From positions 62,001 through 126,000 of IMG/VR virus record IMGVR_UViG_3300030673_000004: a stretch of DNA of 64,000 bases; one strand, given 5' to 3'. Under the pieces are notes generated by a model that was not told the origin of the DNA, ran no database searches, and saw nothing but the letters and a program-made list of their open reading frames with translations. Positions 10,774-34,545 of this stretch are shown here, in pieces. A program made the translations under genes and the position numbers. Within the stretch, counting starts at the first letter, position 1. Each line of letters starts with the position of its first letter.

Positions 10774-10870
10774 AAAAGCAGACCTGCTGGAATCAAGAGA
10801 AAAACAATAATCTGTAGAGTGACTTAGAGTAACATCCTGATACTCAAGCGAGGGAGTAGGAGAATCATAC

Positions 10871-11881: not shown

Positions 11882-11955
11882 AAAAATACCTCCAAGAACA
11901 AAGATACGTCAAAATCTAAAAATCAACAGATGCAAAAATAAAGATGTGATATTAA

Positions 11956-12774: not shown

Positions 12775-13325
12775 ACAAAAATATCAGATAATGATGTTTG
12801 ACGCGCAGTCGTTAAACCCGACTCCTGCATTAAAACAGCAAGAACATACGAATTAGGCATAATATGAGGATTTAGTTTATTAAATTCCTGTTCAGATAAC
12901 CCAAAATAACGACAAAGAAACAGACCAACAGCACCACTACGAGAGACACCAGCAGCACAATGAACATAAATAGGAGTTTCTGATACATCAGAAACATAGT
13001 CTAAAATATTACGGGCCTGAGCCGAAGTAAACAATATAGAGGCACCATCAGCTATATTAGGCGTAGAGTCAGTAAAAACAAGAGACAGTACAGAATCAAC
13101 TCCAAGACAAGATAAACCAAGCTTAGCTGTCTCTGTGTCTGCCCAAATACCTCCACTATATGATGCATATGCCAAATCTGTATCTAAGGTTACTTCATCA
13201 CAAATAGAAATAAGTTTAGCTCCTGGCACATATAAAGCAGGAAATGCCCACCTATGATGCAGCACAGACAACACCATCGCGGCACGAGGTACCACACGAA
13301 CAAAAGTAGGCTTAGCTCTAAGCAT
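12771..13325 (-). CDS. Cys-dependent protein-tyrosine/dual-specificity phosphatase-like protein
   Basis: HCAAGVSRS (CX5R) P-loop; downstream PNSYV. Confidence 0.85.
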   Translation of the reverse strand: MLRAKPTFVRVVPRAAMVLSVLHHRWAFPALYVPGAKLISICDEVTLDTDLAYASYSGGIWADTETAKLGLSCLGVDSVLSLVFTDSTPNIADGASILFTSAQARNILDYVSDVSETPIYVHCAAGVSRSGAVGLFLCRYFGLSEQEFNKLNPHIMPNSYVLAVLMQESGLTTARQTSLSDIFV

Positions 13326-13361
13326 ACTGACAAGTATACAAAAAAGTAACCATAAATGAAA

Positions 13362-14621: not shown

Positions 14622-14660
14622 GAGTCGTTATTTACGTATAGGAAGAATGTCCAATCAGAT

Positions 14661-16940: not shown

Positions 16941-16969
16941 AGATTCCTTATATATTTAAGCAACAACTG

Positions 16970-18256
16970 TCAAGTGTTACCTGCAACAATAGACTGAAGA
17001 TCAGAAATAATGCTAGTAGTATGCACAATATTCTTCACATAGTTATAAACTACATGCAGATCTCGCATCTCTTGATGCCGACTGTGAACAAGAGCACGCA
17101 GAATAGAAACAAAATGAGATGATGTTAAAAAGTCAAGCAAAGATTTTGCCCAAACAACGCGCTCTTCCGGTGTTCTTCCAGCAGTCAACCAGCGTCGAGG
17201 AGATACTGCAATCTGATGCAAGGGAAGAAAAGAACCAACAGTAGAGTGTCCTAAATGCTCTTTCCTAAAAGACAGCACTAAACCATGAACGGTATCTTTA
17301 GTGCAACGCATTTTAATACTGGGTTCCTGCGGTGAAGACCTAGGGTGAGGACCATCAAGGTCACAAACAGGGTATGTATTACTAGCAGCAGAACTAGTTG
17401 GGATCAACTCCTGCTCTGCAAAATAACGAGCAACAACTAAAGAGAGGCGCTCATGCTTAAGATGAGTAGCAGCAATCAAAGCACCCGATAAATGCTTCGC
17501 AATACCAATCAGAAGCTCCGGTGTTAGTAAAGTCAGCCAAGCACCGCCAATACCACGATACTCAACTAACTTGTTGTTGTTAGACAACTTGCAAGTATTC
17601 ACAGATACATACTTACCATAGTTGTGTAAAATTCGCTGCGACTCACATAAAGTAGCAACACTCTCCTTGCGGGTCAATGTATGATGTTTTCTATGTGCAT
17701 CAAAGCCGCCAACAGCGGATAAGGTCAGCCGTGTTGTTGCCTGACAGTAATGATTTGAAGAACGCCCAAAGTAGTTAAGTAACCCCATATCATCAGCCAG
17801 AGCACAAAACACATTAGGACGAAAAGTATCCCGTGAAAGACCAAGACACGAAAGTGATATATGTAACCCAGTAGATGGTCCTGTTTTACCACCAATACTC
17901 TGAACTAAGGCAAAAACAGACGTTAATTCGGCCAAAGCCTGATCATCCAGGACTGAAAATGTAGGAGAAATCAATTCAACAGGGCATGAACAACGATGAG
18001 ATGTTGTTATTGAACTATCTGATGTAACAGACCACTTATCATAGCTACGCGGACCATTATGATGAACACCATAGCCACCAGCTTGATCTGATACGCGACT
18101 AGACCCAAGAACAGCCAGAAGTCTATCTCGCACAGCAGTCCAATCAAGAGGGCTCGCAAACTCCAATTCCACACCAAATTTGGATTTGAATGTCTCCAAA
18201 TTTGTAAGTATGGATGGTAACGTAGCTACACGAGCATAGGACTCTAAAAAGTTCAT
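16970..18256 (-). CDS. Putative amidoligase, paralog 2
   Basis: FGVELEF, WSVTSDSSI, VELISP, STGLHI, YVSVNT, VEYRGIGG; ATG overlaps the upstream TGA. Confidence 0.8.
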   Translation of the reverse strand: MNFLESYARVATLPSILTNLETFKSKFGVELEFASPLDWTAVRDRLLAVLGSSRVSDQAGGYGVHHNGPRSYDKWSVTSDSSITTSHRCSCPVELISPTFSVLDDQALAELTSVFALVQSIGGKTGPSTGLHISLSCLGLSRDTFRPNVFCALADDMGLLNYFGRSSNHYCQATTRLTLSAVGGFDAHRKHHTLTRKESVATLCESQRILHNYGKYVSVNTCKLSNNNKLVEYRGIGGAWLTLLTPELLIGIAKHLSGALIAATHLKHERLSLVVARYFAEQELIPTSSAASNTYPVCDLDGPHPRSSPQEPSIKMRCTKDTVHGLVLSFRKEHLGHSTVGSFLPLHQIAVSPRRWLTAGRTPEERVVWAKSLLDFLTSSHFVSILRALVHSRHQEMRDLHVVYNYVKNIVHTTSIISDLQSIVAGNT

Positions 18257-20280
18257 GCAAATTCTCCCAAAAGGATTGGCTTTATCGCACGACAACCCAA
18301 CTGACGAGACAACTCATGAACAGCGCCCGTAACATACCAAGCACGTCGCATCGTTGTTGACAACTGAGCACCTGACTGTACTAGAGACTTCCTCAAAGAA
18401 CGAGTAATTCCTACCGTGTCGGAGTCAAACGAGCGCATTAGAAAGGGTGCAAGAAGTCTGCGAAGTTCTGCATAGGGAGTGAAATCAGTAGGCTGTGCAA
18501 AAACAGACATCACGTTCTCAACAGTAACAAAACTGAGTGCATCATTCCTAATGTAGTCAGAAAGGGTCGTGCAGTTCAAAGAACACTCAGGAAACAAGCA
18601 AACAAGAAGCATGTTGCGCGATACAATTTTCGTATCTTCCATACCAACCTGACGGAAAACACGATGAATATCCGAAGGACCGCAAGGATTTCCCTGGTGC
18701 AGAGCATCATCCATTATCTGAGTAACAACACGCTGAGTCATCGCAGGAAATGTTGTAGTACTCATATAGAACAAGACAGAATCCTTAGAACGTTGCATAG
18801 CAACACGTCGGACTCTATCTGACACGGAAGATACCCAGAGAGTATGGAGAGAAGCACGGTACATCTGGCGATATCGCGAAGTGCGCAGCACACGATTCAG
18901 AGAGGCTACAGAAGTCACCAACGGGGTAGCAGCAGAGGCATACTCACGCAAGAGACGCCCAGGGCTACAAGAACGCAGGGCTGCAATCAAAGAAGAAGAA
19001 AAGTCATTAGGGACAAAAGTCACCTGTGACCACTGATACAAAGACTCAAGTGCGCAAAAAATATCAAGCGCCTGACTCCGGTTTACACCAGAAGTAGATT
19101 GACGGATATTCCAGGATTCACCCGTCTTCTCCAAAGTTACCAAAGATGTACCAGAAGGCTCACTAAAACCAACAGAGGACAATGCACGAGGAGCCTTCAT
19201 AATAAACAACGAATTATCTCGCAGGTAAGCAGCATATGAAACACCCCGTACACGAGGCAACTTCCAGTAAAGGCCGCGAGAAGCTTCTGCATCAAGCAAA
19301 GAAGGAAAAACAGTTACGCGAGACGAGGGGAATAAAGAGTTTGATGGGTCCGTAGCTTGCAAAGCATAGCACAAGCGAGACTCGTAGATCGCAGACAGCA
19401 AGGGATGATCCAAAACACCACTAGCCACAAGAAAAGCTACACCAATACGACGAAACAAATCCTGCATAAAGGGCTCAGGATGCTCCAACCAGTTACCACC
19501 AGGAGAACGATACTCCATATAACCACGGCTAGATAAATTACTGGTATTAACAGAGTACCTGTCACTATAACCACTATCTCTAATAGCCTGTGCCATGCGT
19601 GTTCGCAAAGAACCACCCGACGCATTTAGAGCAGTTCGTACCAAATCAGGATTGTTACCCAACAATGACGTATAGAATACGTTAGCATAGCTATTATTCA
19701 AACGCCCACACTGAGACAAAACAAAGTGATCATCAACCAAAAGGCTAAAAAGCAGAGGATCAAAGTTTTCTCGATGAGGTGTATGAGCAGAAGAGACACC
19801 GACATGCATGCCACAGGATTCGTTTGTGTATGCCCTAATAGGTGTTTCACCATGTGCCCACCTATGGACTTTTAGATAAGTAGAAAACATATCCTGATAA
19901 TCCATCACAGGAGATACCAGTTCCAAATCAAAGGAACCAGTATCCCCATCGTCATCAAAATCAACATCATCCGGATCTAGCGAGCCATCACCTGTGAAAT
20001 GCCACTTAGTGTAACCATCGCCACGATGATCACCATACTCACGTGTAACGTGTCCAACCTCGCCACCAACAGCAGGAATGAAACTCTCAACACAATGCTG
20101 CAGATAACCACGCTCAGAATCAAAATCAGAACGATCTGGGTGCGTACCCGCAAGAATCATCTCATACTCGGCACCCAAACGAATTCCATGATGAGTAAGA
20201 TCTGCGTCAGACACGCTATCAAAGAGCTTAAGAGGAGAACGAAACAACTCGGGTGTGATTACAGAAGTAGGCATAGACAA
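18253..20280 (-). CDS. Putative amidoligase, paralog 1
   Basis: LGAEYE, WHFTGDGSL, LELVSP, SCGMHV, RYSVNT, MEYRSPGG. Confidence 0.78.
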   Translation of the reverse strand: MSMPTSVITPELFRSPLKLFDSVSDADLTHHGIRLGAEYEMILAGTHPDRSDFDSERGYLQHCVESFIPAVGGEVGHVTREYGDHRGDGYTKWHFTGDGSLDPDDVDFDDDGDTGSFDLELVSPVMDYQDMFSTYLKVHRWAHGETPIRAYTNESCGMHVGVSSAHTPHRENFDPLLFSLLVDDHFVLSQCGRLNNSYANVFYTSLLGNNPDLVRTALNASGGSLRTRMAQAIRDSGYSDRYSVNTSNLSSRGYMEYRSPGGNWLEHPEPFMQDLFRRIGVAFLVASGVLDHPLLSAIYESRLCYALQATDPSNSLFPSSRVTVFPSLLDAEASRGLYWKLPRVRGVSYAAYLRDNSLFIMKAPRALSSVGFSEPSGTSLVTLEKTGESWNIRQSTSGVNRSQALDIFCALESLYQWSQVTFVPNDFSSSLIAALRSCSPGRLLREYASAATPLVTSVASLNRVLRTSRYRQMYRASLHTLWVSSVSDRVRRVAMQRSKDSVLFYMSTTTFPAMTQRVVTQIMDDALHQGNPCGPSDIHRVFRQVGMEDTKIVSRNMLLVCLFPECSLNCTTLSDYIRNDALSFVTVENVMSVFAQPTDFTPYAELRRLLAPFLMRSFDSDTVGITRSLRKSLVQSGAQLSTTMRRAWYVTGAVHELSRQLGCRAIKPILLGEFA

Positions 20281-20448
20281 AAAATAAGTTAACTATGCGA
20301 GCCTGTCAAGGCCAAAACCAAAAACATACAAGTATTGGAACAAAAACACGTATATGTGGATAAAATGTTGATAAAATGTTTACTAATACTGATAGCCCGC
20401 ACAAAATACATTGAAAATGTTGACAGTGGGGGTAAATGTACGTAGTTT

Positions 20449-21525
20449 ATGCGAACGATGCCGTTCACCATAGTTACATGCTTCTATAAACTGTTTCAGG
20501 ATGCAGGTATCCGAGAAACTGTCAGAAACGAAGTAGCACGAGCTATTATACGTGGATGTGTCCGCATAAAATCCTATAGAGATCAGCGCAAAGCTATCAA
20601 AAACTTGATAGGTGACACTAGCGAACATCAAGTATATATAAAAGTTCAAGAACTCAAGCACTGCTATGAGATGCAGGTGCTTCTATGGAGAGCACTTTAC
20701 TGTTACATTGATACACAAGATATCTCCAAAGCAGCCTACCTATACCAGATGTCTCTGGCCGATCTAACTTGGGTCATACAACTACTATCAGAAACGCACG
20801 AGTTACAGCAAATACCCGATGTAGCACCAGCACACTGGACAACAACCCCAATAACACAACAAGATGTCTACGACATTGTACAGCACAGACGGGTACAAAG
20901 TACAATCCAAGGTCTACTACGCTACTCCAAAAGCGGTGTTGTTTGGGCGTTTGATCAAGGTATAACTAAAGAAGACTTAAAAGCGGATTTAGAATATAAG
21001 GCTATTGCTACTATACTTAGATATGAAGCAAGTCGCAGAGCAAAATGGCATCTCATAAATGTAGTTGTAATTTCTATGGGAAATGAACTAAACAACAAAA
21101 CACGTAAGTCTACATCGTTAGAATCCGGAAGAATTGTTGAAGAAACAGTAGCTGGGCCAAAAGAAAATGAACCCCAGCACACCCATGCGGCAGCTATGCA
21201 ACGCATAGTATCATTGGTTAGTACAAATGATGAAGGTGATGAATTTGAAATATCACGTGTGCCGTCAGATAATGATTTTGCAAGCCTAAGAAAAGTAACA
21301 GACATTATTGAGTGCATGAAAGAATCCCTCAATAAGCGCATACTTGACTACTTAGACGTAACAGTACTCGGAACACATAATGAACCATTTGAAACGTGGA
21401 TTGAACAGCAAGAAATAGAACATAAGCACCAACTAACTGATGATGCTATTGTCAAAAAAGCACGACAATTCTTCAAACTGACAGCTAAAGATATCAAACT
21501 AATGCAAGAGGCCCTAGTTGTCTGA
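20449..21525 (+). CDS. Hypothetical protein; weak sigma-factor region-2-like segment
   Basis: 358-aa ORF, first gene of the divergent unit; EDLKADLEYKAIATILRYE loosely resembles sigma region 2. Function is weak inference. Confidence 0.6.
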   Translation: MRTMPFTIVTCFYKLFQDAGIRETVRNEVARAIIRGCVRIKSYRDQRKAIKNLIGDTSEHQVYIKVQELKHCYEMQVLLWRALYCYIDTQDISKAAYLYQMSLADLTWVIQLLSETHELQQIPDVAPAHWTTTPITQQDVYDIVQHRRVQSTIQGLLRYSKSGVVWAFDQGITKEDLKADLEYKAIATILRYEASRRAKWHLINVVVISMGNELNNKTRKSTSLESGRIVEETVAGPKENEPQHTHAAAMQRIVSLVSTNDEGDEFEISRVPSDNDFASLRKVTDIIECMKESLNKRILDYLDVTVLGTHNEPFETWIEQQEIEHKHQLTDDAIVKKARQFFKLTAKDIKLMQEALVV

Positions 21526-23017
21526 GATACCTGTTACAGATGCTCCCATTCACCAAGTACTCAATGCCCTTAACCGTATTGAAGCAGAAAAGCATAGAAC
21601 TAAAAAAATTGAAATTTTACAAGAGCTCAAAGATAATCAAATAGCTCAGTGGATGTTCTATATAGACAGTCCTGTTAATAGACACTTTGGTATTAAAGTG
21701 TCTACAGAGGCTACACGACTATACTCAGGAACAGCTAAACCCGACGAAATGCTGACAAGGTTTGAGCAGTTTCAACAAATACTTGAAAAATTACTACAAT
21801 TAAAAATCACAAAACAAGATGCACTAGAACAGCTAGAACATTTATTAGAATCCTGCTCATACACAGAGCTATTCCGTGAAGGTGTTTGGTACACCCGTTT
21901 AATAAACAACGGACTCAGATTGGGCCTGCCTACATCAGCAGTAACAGAATGCTGGCCAGACCTCAAAATCACATCAACACTACCATACGCTCGATCTATA
22001 CTTGATACAACAGGATCTGTATCCGAGCACAAAAGAAAACAAATACAATATCCTTGCGTAGCAGAGCCTATTGTTGGTGGCATCCTCGCATCTGTAATCG
22101 TAGTTAACAGCAATTCATATGTTACAGCATTTGGAAGCCGTAAAATACCATGTTTGCAGCCATGGGCAGACACACTTGCTAGTTTTCTTATGGACGCACC
22201 ACCACTTGTAATTAATGGTGAGTTTATTACAAAAAAAGCATATGATGGGCTATCACGAACAAAACAACGAGAGCGCGTAATACAGCTATGCAAAACAAGT
22301 ATTTTTAATCAAGATGATAATACAGATCAGGCTAAGCAAGAACTCGTATTTATAATCTATGATATATTTACACTAGTATCTCTTCATACAGGTATGTTCA
22401 CACTACCCTATGGGCATGCTAAGGAGTCTTCCTTTTGCCGCTCTACAATACTATCAGCTTTAGCAAAAAAAGCTAGCCACCTAGACGTAACAATTAGATG
22501 TGTACATCAAATACTATGTTTTAACTTTGACGACTTAGAAGAAGCTCATAGGTTTTATTTAACACAAGGCTTCGCAGGAAGCATAATAAAGCCCTGTAAG
22601 GCACCCATAGTATTTAGACCATCTGAGTGCTTATTCAAATGGAAAGAAACAAAAAAGCAGATAGGATATATATTATCTATCTTCCACATCAAAGAAACTA
22701 TAGGAATTGAAGTTTTTGTACCCGATACAGGAATGACAGAACATCTGTACATACCGAATAAAGATGTGCGTGACTGGTTTCAAGAACACAAAAATAACCT
22801 AAACGGATACGCAGTTGAATTTAAGGCCACATCCACAGAAGGTACAGCAAAACTATGTGTACTAACTAAGTTAGTAGCTACACAAGAACCACTATCAGAT
22901 GTGCAAATTGCTGCCTTGAGTGAACGCTTCGGGATAGCACTAAATAGTGCAGAACAAATGTCCTTAAAGCAGTTTCAGACAGCGGCATATGACCTAACAG
23001 AGGAAGATAATGTCTAA
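21518..23017 (+). CDS. T4-type ATP-dependent DNA ligase homolog lacking the catalytic Lys (pseudoenzyme)
   Basis: N-terminus LNRIEAEKHRTKKIEILQELKDN; motif I reads AEPIVGG (not KxDG); INGEF, IIYDIF, GFAGSIIK, LFKWK. Confidence 0.85.
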   Translation: MSEIPVTDAPIHQVLNALNRIEAEKHRTKKIEILQELKDNQIAQWMFYIDSPVNRHFGIKVSTEATRLYSGTAKPDEMLTRFEQFQQILEKLLQLKITKQDALEQLEHLLESCSYTELFREGVWYTRLINNGLRLGLPTSAVTECWPDLKITSTLPYARSILDTTGSVSEHKRKQIQYPCVAEPIVGGILASVIVVNSNSYVTAFGSRKIPCLQPWADTLASFLMDAPPLVINGEFITKKAYDGLSRTKQRERVIQLCKTSIFNQDDNTDQAKQELVFIIYDIFTLVSLHTGMFTLPYGHAKESSFCRSTILSALAKKASHLDVTIRCVHQILCFNFDDLEEAHRFYLTQGFAGSIIKPCKAPIVFRPSECLFKWKETKKQIGYILSIFHIKETIGIEVFVPDTGMTEHLYIPNKDVRDWFQEHKNNLNGYAVEFKATSTEGTAKLCVLTKLVATQEPLSDVQIAALSERFGIALNSAEQMSLKQFQTAAYDLTEEDNV

Positions 23018-24485
23018 ATCATATCTAGAATACGTAAGTGAAGCTATTGAGGCATATAAAAACAAAGATGCAAAGACATTAGCTGCCTGTAAGCAATTAG
23101 CATTTACAGCACGAAGGTACCAAAAACAGAATAGCCAAAGCACAGATACAGTACTTAATCTCTACCCAATACTAGGTATTCATCAGTTAACAGAACTCAC
23201 TTGTAAGTATGAAGTCACATCAATTGAACAGTTCTATCAAGCCGTTCAGTCATATCAGCTAACAGATGTTATCGCTACAAATGCCTTGTGGCAGTGGCGT
23301 GCAGCGAAACAACGAATCCTGCGCACTAGCACCACAAATATTGTTGAACACATCAAACGTACACTCGCCAGAGTAGGCATAAAAACAACTGTAGTAGGGG
23401 AGTTCTCTAGACACAAGGATACAATAGCTAATCTAGAGTTTTGTATTGAAGTAGGATCACAAGATGAAATACTTTTAGCAAAAGCTACACTACAACAAGA
23501 ATTGCTAGCTGAAACTAAAATTACAGATATAGGTCTGAGTATAGATCTCAAAACAGACATATTTGATATTAACTGTTTCCTATATTTTGGAACACATCAA
23601 AATTTCTGCACGTGTTCAATATATCATATTGGACCTAAATGTTTTATTGATAAATTAAATCATAAGCTAGTTAGTCGTGGCTATGAATTAACAAGCACAG
23701 GATTACAAACACTAGAAGGCTTGCAAGTACCGTGTAGGTCGGAGAAGACTATATGGGATATAGTTGGATCTACCATACCCCCAACATCAGCACGTGATAG
23801 TATTGATGACATCATGTATGATACTACAAATCTCGTAACATATAAAACGAGTACAGGTGACACAGGAATAACCTATAGAGCAAAAGACTCAGCAAAAATA
23901 AAGCATTGCTTAGAAAATAAGAGTTTAACGCATGTAGCACTTATTATACAAGAGAATTCCTTAGATGCAGTAACACAAGCTATAGACCAGATACACATAC
24001 TAGTCAAAGATAGTGCTATTCCTGTCTATACAGGACTACTAGTAACATCAAACACACTAGAACATCTAAGTCTTGCAGCTAAAGTAGATTTTCTTATCAT
24101 AGAAGATGATGAAATCAATGCTCTATACAAAATAACACTACCCAAAGCAAGAAAGGTAGCTAAAAACATTATCATACGAAATCCCTTCATGTTCTCCCAA
24201 GGGATGTGTCTGACCAACTCATCTTTCCCAAAAGATGAAATTCTTACTATTCTAAACAAAAACAAAATAGCTATTGAGATAACAGGTAACTGCAACTACG
24301 CAGGAACGCCTGTTGACGCATGGAAAGACGTAATACAGACAAGGTGCGCTATAACCATAGGTTCGGCACAGTACGCAAAACAACAAACACAAAGCATAGT
24401 CTCAGCTAGAATAAAGTGCTGTCAAGCTCTCATAAGCCAACAACGTTTAATGGATGCGGCAGCCTTTGAAGAGTGGCTTAGGTAA
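23010..24485 (+). CDS. DNA polymerase X-PHP homolog with degenerate active sites
   Basis: VVGEFSRHKDTIANLEF (DxD changed to NLE), YHIGPKCF, GYELTSTGL, SEKTIW...IPPTSARD; PHP-like C-half lacks the HxH metal motif. Confidence 0.82.
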   Translation: MSKSYLEYVSEAIEAYKNKDAKTLAACKQLAFTARRYQKQNSQSTDTVLNLYPILGIHQLTELTCKYEVTSIEQFYQAVQSYQLTDVIATNALWQWRAAKQRILRTSTTNIVEHIKRTLARVGIKTTVVGEFSRHKDTIANLEFCIEVGSQDEILLAKATLQQELLAETKITDIGLSIDLKTDIFDINCFLYFGTHQNFCTCSIYHIGPKCFIDKLNHKLVSRGYELTSTGLQTLEGLQVPCRSEKTIWDIVGSTIPPTSARDSIDDIMYDTTNLVTYKTSTGDTGITYRAKDSAKIKHCLENKSLTHVALIIQENSLDAVTQAIDQIHILVKDSAIPVYTGLLVTSNTLEHLSLAAKVDFLIIEDDEINALYKITLPKARKVAKNIIIRNPFMFSQGMCLTNSSFPKDEILTILNKNKIAIEITGNCNYAGTPVDAWKDVIQTRCAITIGSAQYAKQQTQSIVSARIKCCQALISQQRLMDAAAFEEWLR

Positions 24486-24517
24486 AATAGACTACACCTC
24501 CTATCAGGAGGTGTCTT

Positions 24518-24907
24518 ATGGACTTAGAATCTGAGCTGCAACAGAAAAAGAGTAGTTTAATACGCATTGGAGTAATCGGTGTTATCCTGGTAGTACTGGG
24601 TGCTGTTATAGGACGAACATCCGCGCCTCTTGAAGGAGTTTATAGCTCCAAATGGGCACGAACCATAGACAGCTTAAAAGTTGTCAATGAACAACAGAAA
24701 AAACTTGCAGATACGGCTAAGATCCGCATTGACTCCCTACAGATCATTCTAAAAAAACAAAAAGAGCTAACTGCTAGCTTGTATGCCGATGTAGTTAATG
24801 CTAAGTCAAATAGGACAGTAGAACATAACAAAGTCCTTGTACTAAATGATGCAGATCTCATTGCTAAATTTCAAGATGAGATAAGCAAAGTTAAACAAGG
24901 ACACTAA
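24518..24907 (+). CDS. N-terminal TM plus coiled-coil protein (i-spanin-like)
   Basis: RIGVIGVILVVLGAVIG transmembrane helix followed by a long helical Lys/Gln-rich region. Confidence 0.5.
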   Translation: MDLESELQQKKSSLIRIGVIGVILVVLGAVIGRTSAPLEGVYSSKWARTIDSLKVVNEQQKKLADTAKIRIDSLQIILKKQKELTASLYADVVNAKSNRTVEHNKVLVLNDADLIAKFQDEISKVKQGH

Positions 24908-25551
24908 TGGGTGCTCCACACAAACGTGAGGGCCATACTGTTAAAAAGTATGAAAATGGCCGTTTCACATGTGAAATCTGTGGTAGAAACTATAGCCTTA
25001 CAGCTTTAGATGAGCACCACAAAATACCCCAAGAGATTGGTGGCCCCAACACAGATGACAACATAGCATCTCTCTGTGATGGCTGCCACCAGACATTACA
25101 TCGCATTGCATTTGATCTAGTGTCTCTTAGCAAAAAGAAACGCTCCGCCCAAGAAGAAGCCACAGATTACTTAACAGCGCTTGAAGTATCTGATGTAGGA
25201 ACAAGTACAGCAAAATTACTTGAGTTTGCTGTTTACCTAGCGCAAGCTAAGACACTAAAAAAAGATAAGTCATTAGCTGTTCCTGATGGCGATGTAACTA
25301 TTGAACTACCTCAAAGGTACAAAGCCTTACTCATACAAGCAGGTAGAGAAGTCAAAGATGGTGCAGGAAAACGACTAGGTATGAAGGGCATAGTCACACT
25401 GGCAGCACTAGACTATCTAAAAAAGAGGCATCCCGAGCTTAAAGCTGAAATAGAAAAATACATATTTGATGGAATTATCTATGCACAACGCTCTAAAGTA
25501 GACATAGAACAAACTGCAAACAAATATCAGTTTGAAGTACAAAACCTTTAG
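24907..25551 (+). CDS. HNH endonuclease domain protein
   Basis: CEICG...LDEHHKIPQEIGGPNTDDNIASLCDGCH. Confidence 0.85.
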   Translation: MGAPHKREGHTVKKYENGRFTCEICGRNYSLTALDEHHKIPQEIGGPNTDDNIASLCDGCHQTLHRIAFDLVSLSKKKRSAQEEATDYLTALEVSDVGTSTAKLLEFAVYLAQAKTLKKDKSLAVPDGDVTIELPQRYKALLIQAGREVKDGAGKRLGMKGIVTLAALDYLKKRHPELKAEIEKYIFDGIIYAQRSKVDIEQTANKYQFEVQNL

Positions 25552-25735
25552 CTGTTGACAAGCAGACAAAAGTTAACTAAATTAGTTCTATGAAAGAACT
25601 AATTGAAGTAGACAAAGCTACTTGGGAAGCTCTAGTTGAGCTTCTTAATGCTACGGAACTGGCTCGATTCAGTTACACAACTCAAGAATCTGTGAACCAG
25701 AAAAGCGAAGCTGCCAGAAAAGCTCTCCAAGCCTC

Positions 25736-26386
25736 GTGAGTCGCTTTGAAGAAACTCTTGATGCGGAGCAGCTAAAAGAACTAGATCGCCGCTCAGGGAG
25801 GCTTGTGGCCGCTCTGACACCTGTTGCGAACAGTGGCTGGATCTCCAATATGAGACCATCACAAGCGATCCTGTGCTGCATAGGTTCAGGACCGTGGCGA
25901 ATTGAGCGACGAACGCTTATAGAAAAAGGCGCTTTAGATATTTTAGGTAAAAATGACCTAGTAGAAAAATCTATAGAGCTAGATGCATATTTTCCATTAG
26001 AGTGGCAAAAATATTTAGTACAAGACATTGTTCTATATACAGTAAGTACAAAATACCATAAATTTGATACTCTTGTACAGTATCAGCCGTCTAGGGATGC
26101 GTTACGGGACTTAGAAAATGCTCTCAATAAAGACCTGTACAACTTTCCTAAAGTCATATGTATGTTTGTTCGTGATTACTTAGAGTTACCCATAGTTCCA
26201 CGAGATAGACATGTCAACGCTAAACTAAAAGAGTACGGGATACCTCAAAACACACGTTTAGTCACAGAATCTCTTATCCGCATAGTCAATACTATGTCTG
26301 TGAACTCTTATGCTAGAGCTTTGTTTGAAGAAAAGAGTAGTAATCCTCAACATCTTTTGATAGAAGATCATCCTCTTTACTCTTAG
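25736..26386 (+). CDS. HhH-type DNA glycosylase-like protein
   Basis: FPKVICMF...IVPRDRHV resembles the HhH/PVDxHV signature of EndoIII/Ogg families. Confidence 0.5.
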   Translation: MSRFEETLDAEQLKELDRRSGRLVAALTPVANSGWISNMRPSQAILCCIGSGPWRIERRTLIEKGALDILGKNDLVEKSIELDAYFPLEWQKYLVQDIVLYTVSTKYHKFDTLVQYQPSRDALRDLENALNKDLYNFPKVICMFVRDYLELPIVPRDRHVNAKLKEYGIPQNTRLVTESLIRIVNTMSVNSYARALFEEKSSNPQHLLIEDHPLYS

Positions 26387-26917
26387 TAGTTCTTAGTTAC
26401 TCTTTACAGTAATCTTAACTACTTATATTTACTTACATATGCTGGAAGGGTTTGTTAGATTCAAGGAGATTGATGCGCCTCCCCAAACCCCTCCATAACT
26501 TTCCTTGCCCAGAGATGGCTAAAAGCTCAACTCTGTAAGTAATAATTAAGGATGGTAAGGTGGCGCATCGCTCTGCCCTCAGATCTAACAAGCCTTCCGG
26601 ATATGCCGTATAGGGCTTGCTGAGTTCTTAGGCTAACCCACCCGCCTCCCGCCGTTAGATCGGCATGTACCCAAGACTTTTTCAAGTCGCCGCAAGCTTC
26701 TGAGAAGTCCTTTGCGTGTAGAGGTGCCTGTAGTTTCCTACAGAGGGGTGTTGTATCACCCCAGATAGTGATCCGTAGGCCATCTACGGCAGCAGACAGG
26801 GCTCGTCCCTGTTGGTGGGTTCCAGTGTCTCCCACGCGGCTGTTAAGAATTTACAGCAATCATTTCCAAAATCTCGGGCTTCTTCAATTTTTTTTATTTT
26901 ACATGTAAATCTATAAG
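26374..26917. other. Candidate bidirectional replication origin
   Basis: Non-coding gap where the plus strand switches from A/C-rich to T/G-rich; AT-rich periodic tract at 26374-26440. Confidence 0.6.
26624..26646 (+). repeat. 23-bp direct repeat, copy 1
   Basis: GTTCTTAGGCTAACCCACCCGCC, identical to 28184-28206. Confidence 0.95.
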
Positions 26918-27898
26918 ATGAAAACAGTAAAAGCTCTTACACGAAATACACAACTAACTCATGATTTTGACGTGTCTTTTCATGGACCCGATGCGACCTT
27001 ATCTTGTGAGTCTGGAGGCTTTGAAGATAATACTTCATTGGTACTGTTTTTGTTTCTGCTCTTGCGTGATCATTTGCCCTCCGGTGTTGTTGAGGAACTT
27101 GTGCGTGAGAGCAGCGTTGCTCCTGAGGCTGGTGTGCGTTACAGTAATGCGTACTTAGCCCAGTACGCTACTAACTTAGCATTACGTCTATTGTGTATAG
27201 ATGTACCTGAAGTTACACCTATTTTTGATGGTGTTAAGATAACAGAATGGTTGAATCAGAACCAGATAAGCATCATTAATAGATTTCATCGTCATCAGCC
27301 GAAGGGATTGGAGCTGTGTCCAAAAGCTGTTGATGGCTCTGGTTGGGCTTTAGTTACATTTTCTTCTGCTCATCTTAGTTTCCCTTTTCCCTGCGTGCTT
27401 GTTGGTCGGAACTATATTTTAGTACCATCTGGGACTACTAATCTTCGCATTGAGTGGGACAGCGCTTCTAGTTTATGGACTCTTTGGAACCCTACAACTG
27501 AAGATACTCATGTACAAGAGAAACATAAAATCAACTATGTGCTGAAACCTAATAACACGCAAGATGAGTGTCGTCAGTTAAGTAATTTGTTAGGTGTTGC
27601 TGTTGATAGACTATCCTCTATGAGGATTTTAGATGCTCGTGGTTGTAGCATTCCTCGTGTTATACGGCTAGATTTATCAACAGGTGCTGCCTTAGTTGGA
27701 ATTTCTGCGTTTCCTGAAAGTAAGGCCGATCATCCTAAACCTACTACGGATGTTCCTGGCTGCACAGATGCTGTCCTGGGTACTTTATTAGAAGCACATG
27801 TTAATCTTTCTGGGTGCTTTTTGCACTTCCCTCAATATGAGCCCTCATGGGAGCCTATTGCTGATATAGTTATTCCTTTATGTACATCTGCAGGTTGA
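26918..27898 (+). CDS. Hypothetical protein
   Basis: 326-aa ORF between the two direct repeats. Confidence 0.7.
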   Translation: MKTVKALTRNTQLTHDFDVSFHGPDATLSCESGGFEDNTSLVLFLFLLLRDHLPSGVVEELVRESSVAPEAGVRYSNAYLAQYATNLALRLLCIDVPEVTPIFDGVKITEWLNQNQISIINRFHRHQPKGLELCPKAVDGSGWALVTFSSAHLSFPFPCVLVGRNYILVPSGTTNLRIEWDSASSLWTLWNPTTEDTHVQEKHKINYVLKPNNTQDECRQLSNLLGVAVDRLSSMRILDARGCSIPRVIRLDLSTGAALVGISAFPESKADHPKPTTDVPGCTDAVLGTLLEAHVNLSGCFLHFPQYEPSWEPIADIVIPLCTSAG

Positions 27899-27928
27899 TG
27901 CTTGTTTTATTTTGAAAGGATTTCATGA

Positions 27929-28117
27929 GTGAGCTGTCTTAAGGGATGGGGGATTCTGTACGCAGACCACTCAGACGTGACGGATTCCACTGAGACAAAC
28001 GTTGAACGAGCTGTAGCATGTCTGAAAACTCATTTCAGTGAGGTCACTGATGTTCCTATGGAGTACTCCTGTGCTGTTATGGGCGAGTGCTGTGAAGAAG
28101 AATGTTGCGATGAATAA
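27929..28117 (+). CDS. Small acidic Cys-rich protein
   Basis: 62 aa ending GECCEEECCDE; AAGGA RBS upstream. Confidence 0.5.
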   Translation: MSCLKGWGILYADHSDVTDSTETNVERAVACLKTHFSEVTDVPMEYSCAVMGECCEEECCDE

Positions 28118-28183
28118 ATAAAATTGATGTCTAACAAGTGGTGTAGCTGACACAACCGAGATACACGCATCTCATACATGTGG

Positions 28184-28206
28184 GTTCTTAGGCTAACCCA
28201 CCCGCC
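28184..28206 (+). repeat. 23-bp direct repeat, copy 2
   Basis: GTTCTTAGGCTAACCCACCCGCC. Confidence 0.95.
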
Positions 28207-28270
28207 GTCGCACTTCTCACGCTTGCGTGAGGCTCTGGTATAAGAAAAGTTTTGTTCTTTTGAAAAAATC

Positions 28271-28298
28271 TTGACTTCTTCAATTTTTTGTGTATACT
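28271..28298 (+). promoter_or_regulatory. sigma70 promoter
   Basis: TTGACT-16-TG.TATACT. Confidence 0.75.
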
Positions 28299-28305
28299 TA
28301 TGTTT

Positions 28306-28434
28306 ATGAGAACGACAACACAAGCACAGGCGGCTAAAGCCGAACAAGGTAATACAATTACCAGTGCTCAGACATGTGGGTATAATAGCTTACGTGTCCG
28401 TGTGGGTCAAAGTTCTCAGGTTGATCTGCCTTAA
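28306..28434 (+). CDS. 42-aa leaderless micro-ORF
   Basis: MRTTTQAQAAKAEQGNTITSAQTCGYNSLRVRVGQSSQVDLP; ATG 7 nt after the -10 box; terminator follows. Confidence 0.55.
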   Translation: MRTTTQAQAAKAEQGNTITSAQTCGYNSLRVRVGQSSQVDLP

Positions 28435-28461
28435 AGAAAGGCAACAAATCTAAGAGACCTT

Positions 28462-28490
28462 GGCCCACTTCTCCGGAAGCGGGCCTTTTT
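28462..28490 (+). terminator. Intrinsic terminator
   Basis: GGCCC.CTTC-TCCG-GAAG.GGGCC followed by TTTTTGTTTTT. Confidence 0.8.
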
Positions 28491-28534
28491 GTTTTTGTGC
28501 ATTCTTGAAACAAAAGAAGATAAAAACAAAACTC

Positions 28535-28563
28535 TTGACAAATCTACATAAATTGAGTATCTT
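28535..28563 (+). promoter_or_regulatory. sigma70 promoter at the head of the RNA island
   Basis: TTGACA-17-TATCTT. Confidence 0.75.
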
Positions 28564-28569
28564 TAGAAT

Positions 28570-29530
28570 ATCAGCACAGAGCAAGAGCATCGACAGCGTC
28601 ACAAGACAATATCGGTAATCAAGCGAAGTGTCATTCATCTTTGACAGTTTTGGTGGGCGCATTGCCCAAGTGAGTGTTAAGCAATCATCTTCATTGGGAG
28701 GTTGGCCTAAAAGCAGCCATCCTATAATGAGTGACGAGCAGAACCGAACAGTAAAGGCTTTAGAGGAAACATCCTGTGACTGGGAGAGCTCACATGTCTT
28801 GAAAGACAGCACGTGGGTGTTGACACCGAATATGAAGCAGGGTGCTAAAGTTCTTGGGGAAGGTTGATAGGAAAGTCGCATGGGAGTCGCGTCCCTGGCA
28901 ACGTCAAAATGGCTAAGACTGAAACTATCTTTTAATGTGAAGTCCATCATAGCAATATGTTCACCTTAGTGACAGCCTGTCTATTCCGATGCACTCGGAC
29001 GGCAGAGAGACTTGATTTGTGGTTGGTTTGTCTCTTTCTGTCGGACTCGGTCAATCAATCTTGTGTAGTCTTTGGCGTATAAGCACACCAATGGAAGTGA
29101 TCGTAGATTACAGTACTTGTGAAACTAAACGCTCGGGTGGTAGCCAACCCACAGAGGCGCTAAGGGGTACAATGGAAAGTTGTACCTGTCGATAGGGACC
29201 TAAGCTACCCCTACAGGGAAATGAGTCGGGTGATCCGAATGATACCTTGTACAGCCGTAGTAATACGGTCTTCTCGGAACTTGCGTGAAATTAAACCACA
29301 CGGGAAGAGAAGCGTAAGTGCGCTTTGAAATAAGCTAGACAATAAGTACTGTTTTTTACTGCAGGCTCACGCTTGCGTGAGTCTGAAACGCCATCTCAGT
29401 GAGAGTGCTGATGGCATTATGCATGATAGAATGCTGGTATTGCATAACTTGTACCTTAGCCAACCTAGGGAATCAAGTCCAGAATCGTAGCGTTGGGACT
29501 CAACCGAGTCGGTGAAATTCCTGTCGGTTA
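28570..29530 (+). ncRNA. Large structured ncRNA candidate (family unassigned; GOLLD/ROOL-like context)
   Basis: About 960 nt after a promoter with no credible plus-strand gene; dense hairpins at 28795-28808, 29166-29186, 29255-29268 and 29362-29385; abuts the first tRNA. Confidence 0.6.
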
Positions 29531-29532
29531 TT

Positions 29533-29606
29533 TGGGGTATAGCTCAGTAGGTAGTAGCTCCGTGCTGTTAACACGGTGGTCAAAGGTTCGAGTCCTTTTA
29601 CCCCAG
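29533..29606 (+). tRNA. tRNA-Asn(GTT)
   Basis: TGGGGTA/TACCCCA acceptor; CCGTG-CTGTTAA-CACGG; AAAGG-TTCGAGT-CCTTT. Confidence 0.92.
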
Positions 29607-30264: not shown

Positions 30265-30360
30265 GATGGGATAGCTCAATTGGTAGAGCGGCTCGCCCCC
30301 TTTAGGGATCGGGTGTGAAGGAGACTTCGTCGGTTGATGGTTCGAATCCATCGCTCATCT
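30265..30360 (+). ncRNA. Atypical tRNA-like RNA with expanded anticodon region and long variable arm
   Basis: GATGGGA..TAGCTCAATTGGTAGAGC; GCTCG[CCCCCTTTAGGGAT]CGGGT; variable arm GTGAAG-GAGA-CTTCGT; GATGG-TTCGAAT-CCATC. Confidence 0.7.
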
Positions 30361-32050: not shown

Positions 32051-32089
32051 CTTCATTTTTCATAATCACCATTGTTAAGGGAGTTACTT

Positions 32090-34512: not shown

Positions 34513-34545
34513 TTGTGTAAATGAGATCTATTTAAGGAGATCTCT

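What the first reader, a model, noticed from the sequence alone, without database searches (positions are those of the whole stretch)
20449..26386. Head-on operon beside the origin built from repair-enzyme folds
Seen: six plus-strand genes (sigma-like unknown, dead ligase, dead PolX, TM protein, HNH, HhH glycosylase-like) point toward the skew switch. They keep an A/C-rich coding strand, unlike every other gene block here, so they have long been on the inferred lagging strand. Inference: a glycosylase-nuclease-polymerase-ligase set with its synthetic steps disabled may act as a nick/gap-binding complex for origin function, DNA protection or attack on host DNA.
Basis: inference. Interest (0 to 1): 0.6.

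Follow-up and report, generated by a model that had tools for sequence, protein, structure and literature searches.

The report
Repair operon with dead ligase, polymerase
A 375-kb phage from peat carries a conserved six-gene operon descended from a DNA-repair module in which the ligase and the polymerase have lost their catalytic residues yet are still kept by selection, and it sits beside an unrecognised structured RNA at the point where the genome's strand composition flips.

Summary
B is a T4-type ATP-dependent DNA ligase homologue without the motif I lysine. C is a bacterial-type PolX-PHP homologue without two of its three catalytic aspartates and without the PHP histidines. D is a single-pass membrane protein. 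E is an intact HNH nuclease. F has an HhH-GPD glycosylase fold in a confident model. A is 'sigma-like' only as a weak lead.

The operon order is kept in five close relatives and three distant ones. Two distant relatives keep every catalytic motif of the ligase and PolX-PHP, so catalysis was lost in this clade. dN/dS of 0.01-0.14 shows that all six genes are still under selection. A separate intact ligase lies elsewhere in the genome.

The operon does lie at the genome-wide skew minimum, and its coding strand is A-rich. But about a third of this genome's ORFs share that 'head-on' composition, so it is not unique. Origin function and complex formation remain untested.

An unexpected extra: directly 3' of F, at the skew flip, lies a ~400-nt covarying structured RNA on the minus strand. 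It has no Rfam match and was found at this position only in the dead-enzyme clade.

The parts
20281..20448 (.). Divergent intergenic region between the minus-strand Amidoligase_2 block and gene A. It presumably holds promoters for both directions.
   Evidence: ORF map. The same divergent arrangement occurs in L002-L006. It is 71% nt identical to L002. Sigma-70-like matches here are not above chance.
20449..21525 (+). Gene A, 358 aa. All-helical protein of an uncharacterised phage family, possibly a very divergent sigma-70-type factor.
   Evidence: No Pfam, PHROG or NCBIfam hit. 51 clusters of relatives were found and none carries a sigma Pfam domain. The AF2 model has pLDDT 68. Sigma domain-2 chains match residues 135-225 at Z 5.2-6.3. 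In the Atlas, 7 of 10 structural neighbours are sigma-70 families and feature similarity to a viral Sigma70_r2 cluster is 0.94. BFVD matches uncharacterised proteins of similar length, including one of Erwinia phage Y3, at E 4e-6 to 2e-3. hhalign gives a weak local match to the region 2.2-like stretch of Lu11 gp174, with probability 14%. dN/dS is 0.07.
21518..23017 (+). Gene B, 499 aa. T4-type ATP-dependent DNA ligase homologue with the adenylylation site destroyed.
   Evidence: phrog_114 ATP-dependent DNA ligase, E 4.9e-17. The profile hits T4 ligase 6dt1 over motifs IV-V and the N-terminal DNA-binding domain. hhalign to the L007 ligase homologue gives 99.5% over 456 columns. In the motif I column, the KxDG of L007, L008 and L015 reads I/R-x-G-G/S in all 9 clade members. 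Motif III DGE reads NGE. Motif IV EG reads A/F/S/D-G. Motif V KxK is kept. dN/dS is 0.10.
23010..24485 (+). Gene C, 491 aa. Bacterial-type PolX-PHP homologue with degenerate polymerase and PHP active sites and a shortened N-terminal 8-kDa region.
   Evidence: Pfam DNA_pol_B_thumb, weak. The profile hits ASFV Pol X and Pol beta palm plus thumb, E 5e-4. hhalign to the L007 protein gives 97%, E 6e-11, over 427 columns including the PHP part. That L007 protein is NCBIfam PRK08609 PolX, E 1.5e-89, with Pfam HHH_8, palm, thumb and PHP domains. DxD reads x-L-E/T, the third Asp reads F/S/C/V, and the PHP HxH is lost in all 5 clade members; all are intact in L007 and L015. dN/dS is 0.13.
24518..24907 (+). 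Gene D, 129 aa. Single-pass membrane protein with a helical, probably coiled-coil, tail.
   Evidence: A hydrophobic stretch at about residues 15-33 is present in all five orthologues. The sequence is poorly conserved (22-32% identity) except for a few invariant residues. Proteins of 114-117 aa occupy the same position before the HNH gene in L007, L008 and L015. dN/dS is 0.12.
24907..25551 (+). Gene E, 214 aa. HNH nuclease with an intact beta-beta-alpha-metal motif and zinc-binding cysteine pairs, plus a conserved C-terminal domain of unknown fold.
   Evidence: Pfam HNH, E 1.7e-9, over the cut-off, and 22 HNH PHROGs. CxxC, DEHH, N, CxxCH and H are invariant. It is the most conserved gene of the operon: 76-100% aa identity where B is 35-77%, and dN/dS 0.01. 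The C-terminal domain has no informative match.
25552..25735 (.). E-F spacer. In relatives L003, L004 and L005 this site holds 2-3 paralogous DUF8385 genes.
   Evidence: Gene tables and paralogy by BLASTP. A sigma-70-like match lies at 25555-25583, but such matches are not above chance.
25736..26386 (+). Gene F, 216 aa. HhH-GPD superfamily (endonuclease III / OGG / MutY) fold, with an invariant Lys139 and Asp157 at the spacing of a bifunctional glycosylase/lyase.
   Evidence: The AF2 model has pLDDT 92.7. Foldseek's listed top PDB hits are all HhH-GPD glycosylases. VIA gives Z 11.9 over 186 residues for EndoIII-3 4uob and Z 9-11 for EndoIII, MagIII, MutY and OGG, with 126 chains at Z >= 8. Six of the eight Atlas rows are HhH-GPD clusters, TM 0.54-0.68. 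P-K-V and D-R-H-V are kept in all relatives including the distant ones. There is no sequence-level match to Pfam HhH-GPD, PDB or E. coli Nth. dN/dS is 0.14.
26464..26859 (-). Unannotated structured RNA of about 400 nt, convergent with F and lying at the AT-skew flip.
   Evidence: Within the F-downstream spacer (85% nt identity to L002 overall), the core aligns at 90.6% over 481 nt, against 72-80% for genes A, B, C and F. It is still alignable in L003 and L004, where the proteins are 35-50% identical. RNAalifold on the minus strand predicts 99 pairs, 31 with compensatory double changes among only 4 sequences, and GNRA loops on that strand. The alifold energy is -89.0 with z = -7.4 against column shuffles, compared with -75.5 and z = -5.6 for the plus strand. 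There is no Rfam match at E <= 1. The 102-aa minus-strand ORF inside it is not called in L002 or L004.

Best explanation
The operon descends from a phage-borne base-excision / single-strand-break repair module. The ancestral order was: regulator-like A, ATP-dependent ligase, PolX-PHP polymerase/exonuclease, small membrane protein, HNH nuclease, HhH-GPD glycosylase.

In the lineage of this 375-kb phage, the two synthetic enzymes became pseudoenzymes. The ligase lost the adenylate-accepting lysine. PolX lost two of its three metal-binding aspartates and the PHP histidines. The DNA-cutting members kept their catalytic residues: the HNH motif in E, and a Lys/Asp pair in F. Up to here the account is shown by sequence, profile and model comparisons.

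The rest is inferred. B and C persist under purifying selection as non-catalytic binders of nicked and gapped DNA. They act as scaffolds or sensors that work with the HNH nuclease and the glycosylase-like protein. Sealing, and presumably gap filling, are left to other phage enzymes, such as the intact 327-aa ligase encoded about 160 kb away.

The position next to the skew minimum and the head-on orientation are conserved features of this clade. No evidence yet links them to what the proteins do.
For: Family assignments: B, C, E, F.

Catalytic-residue table across 9 B orthologues and 5 C orthologues, compared with L007, L008 and L015. L007 and L015 keep KxDG, DGE, EG and KxK in the ligase. In PolX-PHP they keep GSFRR, DxD, the third Asp, HxH and D..H. 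L008 keeps the ligase motifs but has a partly degenerate PolX, an intermediate state.

Purifying selection between the window and L002, at dS 0.4-1.6: A 0.07, B 0.10, C 0.13, D 0.12, E 0.01, F 0.14. The neighbouring amidoligase scores 0.20.

Gene order is conserved in eight independent contigs. The A/B, B/C and D/E overlaps suggest coupled translation.

A canonical ATP-dependent ligase with all motifs intact lies at genome 246378-247361.

Precedent for non-catalytic ligase-derived proteins in jumbo phages: stand-alone ligase DNA-binding domains in phiKZ-like phages (PMC7824862).

Precedent for viral PolX-plus-ligase BER: the PgV PolX-ligase fusion (PMC5537341).
Against: No experiment or expression data exist; no RNA runs hold the locus. 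DNA binding by B and C is assumed from fold ancestry and was not tested.

F's glycosylase assignment rests on a predicted fold. Sequence profiles do not see it, and the Lys139/Asp157 mapping onto Nth Lys120/Asp138 is by spacing and helix position only.

The 298-320-aa gene that lies between PolX and D in the distant relatives is missing here, so the module was remodelled in more ways than active-site loss.

The adjacent structured RNA was found at this position only in the dead-enzyme clade. That hints at a function other than repair.
Confidence: 0.45

Rival explanations
1. Origin-initiation module. The HNH and HhH-GPD enzymes create a strand break at or near the replication start. The dead ligase and dead PolX clamp the nick or gap so that host ligase cannot reseal it and the replisome can load. 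The adjacent ~400-nt RNA, transcribed leftward from the skew flip, could act as a primer or R-loop RNA in the manner of ColE1 RNA II or T4 origin transcripts (own knowledge).
For: The operon and the RNA lie at the genome-wide skew minimum. The AT-skew flip sits just 3' of F in L002, L003 and L004 as well, even where DUF8385 genes are inserted between E and F. The RNA's orientation matches the leftward arm. The RNA was found at this position only in the clade with dead enzymes; the gaps after F in L007, L008 and L015 are under 180 nt.
Against: The origin is inferred from skew alone, and no iterons, DnaA-box-like arrays or AT-rich unwinding element were found. Distant relatives carry the cassette without any nearby skew switch, so the ancestral role was not origin-specific. 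About a third of the genome's genes are equally 'head-on'. Co-location is one evolutionary event, not repeated association.
Confidence: 0.12
2. Host-takeover or counter-defence module. The operon is an early-gene island. Its HNH nuclease attacks host DNA or defence elements, and its dead ligase and PolX act as decoys or sponges for nicked DNA, nucleotides or host repair and defence sensors.
For: Neighbouring genes include an Apyc1-like anti-Pycsar metallo-beta-lactamase, two metallophosphatases, three Amidoligase_2 paralogues and a class-II glutamine amidotransferase. L007 has an Acb2/Tad1-like gene downstream. E is extremely conserved. GC is lower (0.37-0.40) than in the flanks.
Against: None of the six proteins matches a PADLOC model beyond the generic HNH domain. 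The ancestral form, with live ligase and PolX-PHP, looks like repair rather than attack. Nothing indicates early expression.
Confidence: 0.15
3. Ribonucleoprotein function. The dead nucleotidyltransferase-fold proteins B and C bind the adjacent structured RNA rather than damaged DNA, within an RNA-handling neighbourhood.
For: The RNA gene abuts F in all four clade members examined and was not found after F in the live-enzyme relatives. The right flank holds 34 tRNAs, a tmRNA and a TROVE/Ro60-like gene. L007 has RtcB downstream.
Against: This rests on adjacency alone. The RNA is convergent with the operon, not co-transcribed. B's and C's nearest relatives are DNA enzymes. No RNA-binding domain was detected.
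Confidence: 0.08
4. B and C are still enzymes that use non-canonical residues, or else they are decaying relics without function.
For: Motif V lysines, the motif III glutamate and the motif IV lysine of the ligase survive, as does one acidic residue of the PolX DxD pair in most orthologues.
Against: The nucleophilic lysine of motif I is Ile (Arg in one orthologue) in all nine orthologues, and two of the three PolX aspartates are hydrophobic or small residues. By established enzymology of these families, this abolishes adenylylation and two-metal catalysis. The relic reading is contradicted by dN/dS of 0.10-0.13, by intact reading frames in all orthologues and by conserved length.
Confidence: 0.05

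Closest known systems
T4-type ATP-dependent DNA ligases (phrog_114; T4 Dnl structure 6dt1)
   Same: Full-length homology of B. Similarity covers the N-terminal helical DNA-binding region, nucleotidyltransferase motifs III-V and the overall length of about 500 aa.
   Different: The motif I Lys and Asp, the motif III Asp and the motif IV Glu are replaced in every member of this clade. The genome carries a separate intact 327-aa ligase.
Bacterial PolX with C-terminal PHP domain (NCBIfam PRK08609; B. subtilis PolX/YshC, PMC2566882)
   Same: C aligns over fingers, palm, thumb and PHP to the L007 orthologue, which is a bona fide PRK08609 match. The Gly...Arg palm motif and the thumb are retained.
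   Different: Two of the three catalytic Asp residues and the PHP metal ligands are lost. About 45 N-terminal residues (the 8-kDa region) are missing relative to L007.
Virus-encoded base-excision repair sets of large DNA viruses (ASFV Pol X, AP endonuclease and ligase; Phaeocystis globosa virus PolX-ligase fusion, PMC5537341)
   Same: A virus carries its own PolX together with a ligase and lesion-processing nucleases. The ASFV Pol X palm and thumb are the best PDB sequence match of C.
   Different: Here the genes form one operon in a phage, with an HNH nuclease and an HhH-GPD protein, and the synthetic steps are inactivated in this clade. The live-enzyme form (L007, L015) is the closer analogue.
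Endonuclease III / OGG / MutY (HhH-GPD superfamily)
   Same: Predicted fold of F over about 185 of 216 residues, Z 9-12 and TM 0.54-0.68. An invariant Lys and Asp lie 18 residues apart, at the start of a helix and just before the next helix, as in Nth Lys120/Asp138 (spacing from own knowledge).
   Different: There is no sequence-profile match, no Gly-rich hairpin and no Fe-S cluster cysteines. A family-specific CCIGSGPW motif is present.
Stand-alone ligase DNA-binding domain proteins of phiKZ-like jumbo phages (Iyer et al. 2021, PMC7824862)
   Same: A jumbo phage keeps a non-catalytic derivative of an ATP-dependent ligase, which the authors proposed as a recruiter of a ligase.
   Different: Those proteins are isolated helical domains. 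B is a full-length ligase homologue with point loss of catalytic residues, paired with a dead PolX in a conserved operon.

Membership tests
ATP-dependent DNA ligase (covalent nucleotidyltransferase superfamily) | Motif I KxDG with the AMP-accepting lysine | tested here: not met
   The column reads I/R-V/I-G-G/S in all 9 clade members, against K-K/L-D-G in L007, L008 and L015.
ATP-dependent DNA ligase (covalent nucleotidyltransferase superfamily) | Motifs III (DGE), IV (EGxxxK) and V (KxK) | tested here: inconclusive
   Motif III reads NGE, with Glu kept. Motif IV has lost its Glu but kept its Lys. Motif V FKWK is kept.
ATP-dependent DNA ligase (covalent nucleotidyltransferase superfamily) | Significant profile similarity over the nucleotidyltransferase domain | tested here: met
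   phrog_114 E 4.9e-17 over residues 11-377. hhalign to the L007 homologue gives 99.5%. Pfam models are below cut-off.
Family X DNA polymerase with PHP domain | Three catalytic aspartates of the palm (DxD plus D) | tested here: not met
   The first Asp is N/K/S/T/R, the second is E (T in one orthologue), and the third is F/S/C/V. All are intact in L007 and L015.
Family X DNA polymerase with PHP domain | Palm-thumb architecture and helix-hairpin-helix fingers | tested here: met
   The PDB profile matches ASFV Pol X and Pol beta at residues 125-256, E 5e-4. hhalign to the L007 PolX covers residues 52-491. The Pfam thumb match is weak.
Family X DNA polymerase with PHP domain | PHP metal-binding His/Asp motifs | tested here: not met
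   HxH and the later D..H are present in L007 and L015 (HxH also in L008) and absent in all five clade members.
HNH endonuclease | Beta-beta-alpha-metal motif (His general base, Asn, metal-binding His) with zinc-binding cysteine pairs | tested here: met
   Pfam HNH 38.1 bits against a 21.4-bit cut-off. C22/C25, D35-E-H-H38, N52, C57/C60, H61 and H65 are invariant.
HhH-GPD DNA glycosylase superfamily | Two-domain helical fold with helix-hairpin-helix | tested here: met
   On a predicted model of pLDDT 92.7, Z reaches 11.9, 126 chains score Z >= 8, and TM is 0.54-0.68 to the six HhH-GPD cluster rows.
HhH-GPD DNA glycosylase superfamily | Catalytic Asp (and Lys in bifunctional members) after the hairpin; Gly/Pro-rich loop | tested here: inconclusive
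   K139 and D157 are invariant and 18 residues apart, at helix boundaries of the model. A residue-level superposition was not available. The GxG hairpin is absent.
HhH-GPD DNA glycosylase superfamily | Match to the family's sequence profile | tested here: not met
   Pfam PF00730 finds nothing in the genome. hhalign against E. coli Nth and the PDB profile search are both negative.
Sigma-70 family | Regions 2 and 4 recognisable by profile or fold | tested here: inconclusive
   Sigma chains top the Foldseek list, but at E > 0.7. Domain-2 matches score Z 5.2-6.3. Atlas neighbours are mostly sigma families at TM 0.2-0.27. Pfam finds nothing in 52 relatives. hhalign to the phage's own sigma factor is negative. 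The match to Lu11 gp174 region 2.2 is weak, with probability 14%.
Known large structured RNAs (Rfam 15: RNase P, tmRNA, group I/II introns, GOLLD, ROOL, OLE, HEARO and others) | Covariance-model match | tested here: not met
   No family matches at E <= 1 on 26300-27000, while the element shows strong covariation.

The most novel reading that the evidence does not exclude
The operon and the adjoining ~400-nt covarying RNA form one origin-linked machine. The RNA is transcribed leftward from the skew flip and acts as a primer or R-loop RNA, or as a guide. The HNH and HhH-GPD enzymes make a defined strand break. The catalytically dead ligase and PolX hold that nick or RNA-DNA junction open for replisome loading, or serve as a T4-style nick 'enhancer' for the sigma-like protein A. 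On this reading, repair enzymes were converted into structural parts of an initiation complex.
Probability: 0.1. Interest if true: 0.85.

Novelty: new variant of a known kind. Interest (0 to 1): 0.55.

Why it matters
Virus-encoded repair sets with PolX and ligase are known from giant eukaryotic viruses. I found no description of such a conserved operon in phages.

The value here is a natural before-and-after series. Relatives L007 and L015 have fully intact ligase and PolX-PHP. L008 is an intermediate. This clade has lost both active sites, yet the genes stay under purifying selection.

That makes the question 'what do dead nucleic-acid enzymes do?' directly testable with two paired pseudoenzymes and their live orthologues.

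The unrecognised ~400-nt structured RNA next door lies at the genome's skew switch, just before a 34-tRNA array. It is a candidate new RNA family and possibly an origin-associated transcript.

Tried and rejected
- **Single-sequence PDB searches** of B and C gave nothing. Profiles were needed.
- **tblastn and pattern scans.** tblastn of B against 50,697 phage records found no relative. Pattern-based scans of IMG/VR for B and C also found none. The clade is known only from metagenome assemblies (peat, freshwater).
- **Cultured phages.** The only hits are a generic HNH stretch in Pseudomonas phage Lu11, whose region lacks the cassette, and host-like PolX genes in fragmentary Listeria and Staphylococcus 'phage' records.
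There is therefore no verdict on binding.
- **Read laying** was not used, because only contig-level DNA runs hold the locus and no RNA runs do.
- **A as a sigma factor.** hhalign against the phage's own sigma factor and against a sigma-like gene of L008 was negative. Pfam on 52 relatives was negative. A PDB profile search hit only a designed repeat protein.
- **F by sequence.** hhalign against E. coli Nth and a PDB profile search were both negative.
- **E's C-terminal domain.** The Atlas search was uninformative.
- **Origin features.** Repeat search and fine-scale composition showed no iterons or repeat arrays. Promoter and terminator scans were at chance level.
- **More copies of the RNA.** An exact 21-mer search of IMG/VR found none. 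A gapped pattern in JGI metagenomes found only a 375,756-bp contig, presumably the same phage.
- **Covariance model of the RNA** was not built, because a model of about 400 positions exceeds the tool's calibration limit.
- **Second conserved non-coding stretch** (about 28.2-29.4 kb). My quick alignment used poorly matched coordinates and says nothing. A RAGATH-33 hit at 29159-29246 scores 31 bits against a gathering score of 120 and is rejected.
- **Recent horizontal island** was considered and rejected: arrangement and skew are shared by lineages with saturated dS.
- **The 102-aa minus-strand ORF at 26527-26835** is not called in L002 or L004 and lies within the covarying RNA, so I treat it as spurious.

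Full report
**Setting.** The window is bases 62001-126000 of a 375,537-bp virus record with direct terminal repeats. The locus is held by peat and freshwater metagenome runs, and no RNA run holds it. The long-ORF map shows minus-strand genes from 227 to 20280, then plus-strand genes from 20449 onward. The six ORFs of the finding lie exactly where stated: A 20449-21525, B 21518-23017, C 23010-24485, D 24518-24907, E 24907-25551, F 25736-26386. A/B and B/C each overlap by 8 nt and D/E by 1 nt, which suggests coupled translation.

**Composition and the 'origin'.** Over the whole genome, cumulative GC skew is lowest at window 24444 and cumulative AT skew highest at window 26269. The opposite switch lies at about 270-303 kb, giving two arms of roughly 180-200 kb. 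To the right of the switch the plus strand has G>C and T>A, and to the left the reverse. By the usual bacterial convention (established knowledge), this makes the 24-27 kb region of the window the origin-like switch.

The plus strand stays A-rich across the change of gene direction at 20.3 kb and flips only at about 26.3-26.9 kb. The skew therefore does not simply follow transcription.

Genes A-E have third-position AT skew of +0.15 to +0.24 and GC3 skew of -0.12 to -0.31. Co-oriented genes score about -0.4 to -0.5 and about +0.2. F is neutral.
- C-richness is a third-position effect only.
- The operon is not unique. With the origin at 87.5 kb and the terminus anywhere in 270-303 kb, 30-38% of ORFs are 'head-on'. 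Of 252 ORFs of 450 nt or more, 35 have AT3 > 0.1. These include a 14-gene block at genome 16.8-34.9 kb and most genes at 305-370 kb. A, B, C and E rank 6th, 7th, 13th and 18th.

No iterons or other origin-like repeats were found.

**What the six proteins are.**

B matches the PHROG of ATP-dependent DNA ligases at E 4.9e-17. As a nine-sequence profile it matches T4 DNA ligase (6dt1) over motifs IV-V and the N-terminal helical domain.

C gives weak Pfam thumb hits. As a profile it matches the palm and thumb of ASFV Pol X and Pol beta at E 5e-4.

E is an HNH nuclease above Pfam's cut-off, with its cysteine pairs and His/Asn/His residues invariant.

D has one hydrophobic span and a helical tail.

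F had no sequence match at all. Its AlphaFold model (pLDDT 92.7, built from 22 sequences) matches HhH-GPD glycosylases almost exclusively. EndoIII-3 scores Z 11.9 over 186 residues. EndoIII, MagIII, MutY and OGG score Z 9-11. Six of the eight ESM Atlas rows are HhH-GPD clusters, at TM 0.54-0.68.

F's invariant Lys139 and Asp157 lie 18 residues apart. The Lys is at the start of one helix and the Asp just before the next. This is the arrangement of Lys120/Asp138 in endonuclease III (own knowledge). F may therefore be catalytically competent, but no residue-level superposition was available.

A is an all-helical protein of a family with 51 representative clusters. Sigma factors recur among its weak structural neighbours. 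One short hhalign match falls on the region 2.2-like stretch of the annotated sigma factor of phage Lu11. No profile method supports the assignment. I treat 'sigma-like' as a lead only.

**Relatives and the loss of catalysis.** Eight homologues of B (35-77% identity) were found. Their contigs (L002-L006 and one without DNA) all show the same layout: an Amidoligase_2 block on the minus strand, then A-B-C-D-E on the plus strand. F follows either directly or after 2-3 DUF8385 paralogues.

Searching with F and A reached three much more distant contigs, L007, L008 and L015. These carry the same order with a few extra small genes and a 297-320-aa gene between C and D. Profile-profile comparison confirms full-length homology of A, B, C and E to the L007 proteins, at 97-99.6%.

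In L007 the C homologue is an unmistakable bacterial PolX. It matches NCBIfam PRK08609 at E 1.5e-89 and Pfam HHH_8, palm, thumb and PHP. C is therefore a PolX-PHP homologue along its whole length.

| Motif | L007, L015 | L008 | This clade |
|---|---|---|---|
| Ligase I (KxDG) | intact | intact | I/R-x-G-G/S in all 9 |
| Ligase III (DGE) | intact | NGE | NGE |
| Ligase IV (EG...K/R) | intact | intact | Glu lost, Lys kept |
| Ligase V (KxK) | intact | intact | kept in most |
| PolX GS-RR motif | intact | intact | G-D/E-F/C-S/A-R |
| PolX DxD | intact | D-L-E | x-L-E/T in all 5 |
| PolX third Asp | intact | lost | F/S/C/V |
| PHP HxH | intact | intact | lost |
| PHP later D..H | intact | lost | lost |

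The active sites were therefore lost within this lineage, with L008's PolX as an intermediate.

The genes are not decaying. Reading frames and lengths are conserved. dN/dS between the window and L002 (dS 0.4-1.6) is 0.07 for A, 0.10 for B, 0.13 for C, 0.12 for D, 0.01 for E and 0.14 for F, against 0.20 for the adjacent amidoligase. E is strikingly constrained, at 76-100% amino-acid identity across the clade.

The genome also encodes an ordinary 327-aa ATP-dependent ligase with all motifs intact, at genome 246378-247361. It has no NAD-dependent ligase and no second PolX.

**Interpretation.** What is shown: a conserved phage operon that is ancestrally a complete short-patch repair set (glycosylase-like protein, HNH nuclease, PolX with PHP exonuclease, ligase). 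In this clade both synthetic enzymes are pseudoenzymes kept by selection.

What is inferred: B and C now serve as binders or scaffolds for nicked and gapped DNA, working with the still-competent E and F, while sealing falls to the separate ligase. I give this about 0.45.

Its only support is conserved position, and the live-enzyme relatives show the cassette away from any skew switch.

A counter-defence role (about 0.15) is suggested only by neighbours: an Apyc1-like protein, phosphatases and amidoligases. PADLOC adds nothing beyond the HNH domain.

Complex prediction could not be run.

**An unexpected neighbour.** The 'spacer' 3' of F is 85% identical to L002 overall, and its core aligns at 90.6% over 481 nt, against 72-80% for genes A, B, C and F. 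It can still be aligned in L003 and L004, where the proteins are only 35-50% identical.

On the minus strand, RNAalifold predicts 99 base pairs, 31 of them with compensatory double substitutions among just four sequences. Several hairpins are capped by GNRA tetraloops on that strand.

The consensus energy is -89.0, with z = -7.4 against 100 column-shuffled alignments. The plus strand gives -75.5 with z = -5.6.

Rfam 15 has no match at E <= 1. The 102-aa ORF inside the element is not called in L002 or L004.

I therefore read window ~26464-26859 (minus strand) as an unrecognised structured RNA of about 400 nt. It is convergent with F and lies at the AT-skew flip. Its 5' end diverges from the first rightward gene at 26918.

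The RNA abuts the F orthologue in all four clade members examined. The short gaps after F in L007, L008 and L015 leave no room for it. It could not be found elsewhere.

Whether it is a primer or R-loop RNA, a partner of the operon's proteins, or unrelated to them is open. A further conserved non-coding stretch at about 28.2-29.4 kb shares a 26-nt motif with it and was not resolved.

**Comparison and novelty.** The closest known systems are listed here.
- T4-type ligases.
- Bacterial PolX-PHP (PMC2566882).
- The virus-encoded BER sets of ASFV and Phaeocystis globosa virus (PMC5537341).
- Endonuclease III-like glycosylases.
- The stand-alone ligase DNA-binding domains of phiKZ-like phages (PMC7824862).

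Literature searches found no description of this operon or of a paired dead ligase and dead PolX in phages. I rate it a new variant of a known kind, with moderate interest (0.55). Interest rises if the RNA and the origin prove to be linked to the operon.

Noticed in passing
window 26464-26859 (minus strand); L002 ~14930-15353, L003 17087-17428, L004 18076-18488: A structured RNA of about 400 nt with strong covariation (99 pairs, 31 compensatory; alifold z = -7.4) and GNRA loops. It has no Rfam match. It lies at the AT-skew flip between the operon and the tRNA array, and was found at this position only in the clade with the dead enzymes.
   Followed up: partly
window 27899-29540: An ORF-poor stretch that is still 76% identical to L002 over 1149 nt, with pieces alignable in L003 and L004. 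It shares a 26-nt motif (28181-28206) with the RNA at 26621-26646. It may hold further non-coding RNA genes. The sub-threshold RAGATH-33 hit at 29159-29246 is not credible.
   Followed up: partly
window 29533-55819: An array of 34 tRNA genes, all on the plus strand, with a tmRNA (34160-34515, 178.7 bits), a TROVE/Ro60-like gene (32072-33478), a PIF1-like helicase (41084-42331) and an HNH_3 gene (48895-49725) interspersed.
   Followed up: no
window 30265-30360: A 96-nt tRNA-like gene that ARAGORN reports as 'tRNA-???' with a two-base anticodon call. It scores 36.8 bits against the Rfam tRNA model. It may be an intron-containing or otherwise aberrant tRNA. L002 has a 95-nt tRNA-Arg at a similar place in its array.
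   Followed up: no
window 227-2863 (minus strand): A topoisomerase IV / gyrase A-like subunit that carries an intein (Hint_2 plus Intein_splicing domains at residues about 82-232). It is followed by a GyrB-like subunit at 2860-4785.
   Followed up: no
window 9201-20280 (minus strand): A conserved block made of a class-II glutamine amidotransferase (9201-10043), an Apyc1-like anti-Pycsar metallo-beta-lactamase (11054-11881), two metallophosphatases (11956-12774, 13362-14621) and three large Amidoligase_2 paralogues (14661-16940, 16970-18295, 18253-20280). The relatives carry 3-4 amidoligase paralogues at the same place.
   Followed up: no
L003 14124-16260; L004 14087-17213; L005 6862-10057: Two to three paralogous DUF8385 genes are inserted between the HNH gene and the glycosylase-like gene in some relatives. 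They are absent from the window and from L002.
   Followed up: partly
genome 246378-247361 (outside the window; L009 1429-2412): An intact 327-aa ATP-dependent DNA ligase (KxDG, DGE, EG, KxK), presumably the working ligase of the phage. A canonical sigma-70-type gene lies at about genome 50.2-51.4 kb.
   Followed up: partly
whole genome: The second skew switch is diffuse. AT skew changes sign near 270 kb, but cumulative GC skew peaks near 303 kb. The 290-300 kb bin is unusually GC-rich (0.473) with positive GC skew.
   Followed up: no
window 26860-26893 and 28256-28289: A 34-nt direct repeat (74% identical) ending in a T-run. One copy lies just upstream of the RNA's 5' end and of gene 26918. 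It may be a promoter or regulatory motif.
   Followed up: no
L007 12294-13508 and 15421-15705; L008 1-1205: The distant relatives with live ligase and PolX carry an RtcB RNA ligase and an Acb2/Tad1-like gene downstream of the cassette (L007), and an IS605 OrfB/TnpB-like gene upstream (L008).
   Followed up: no
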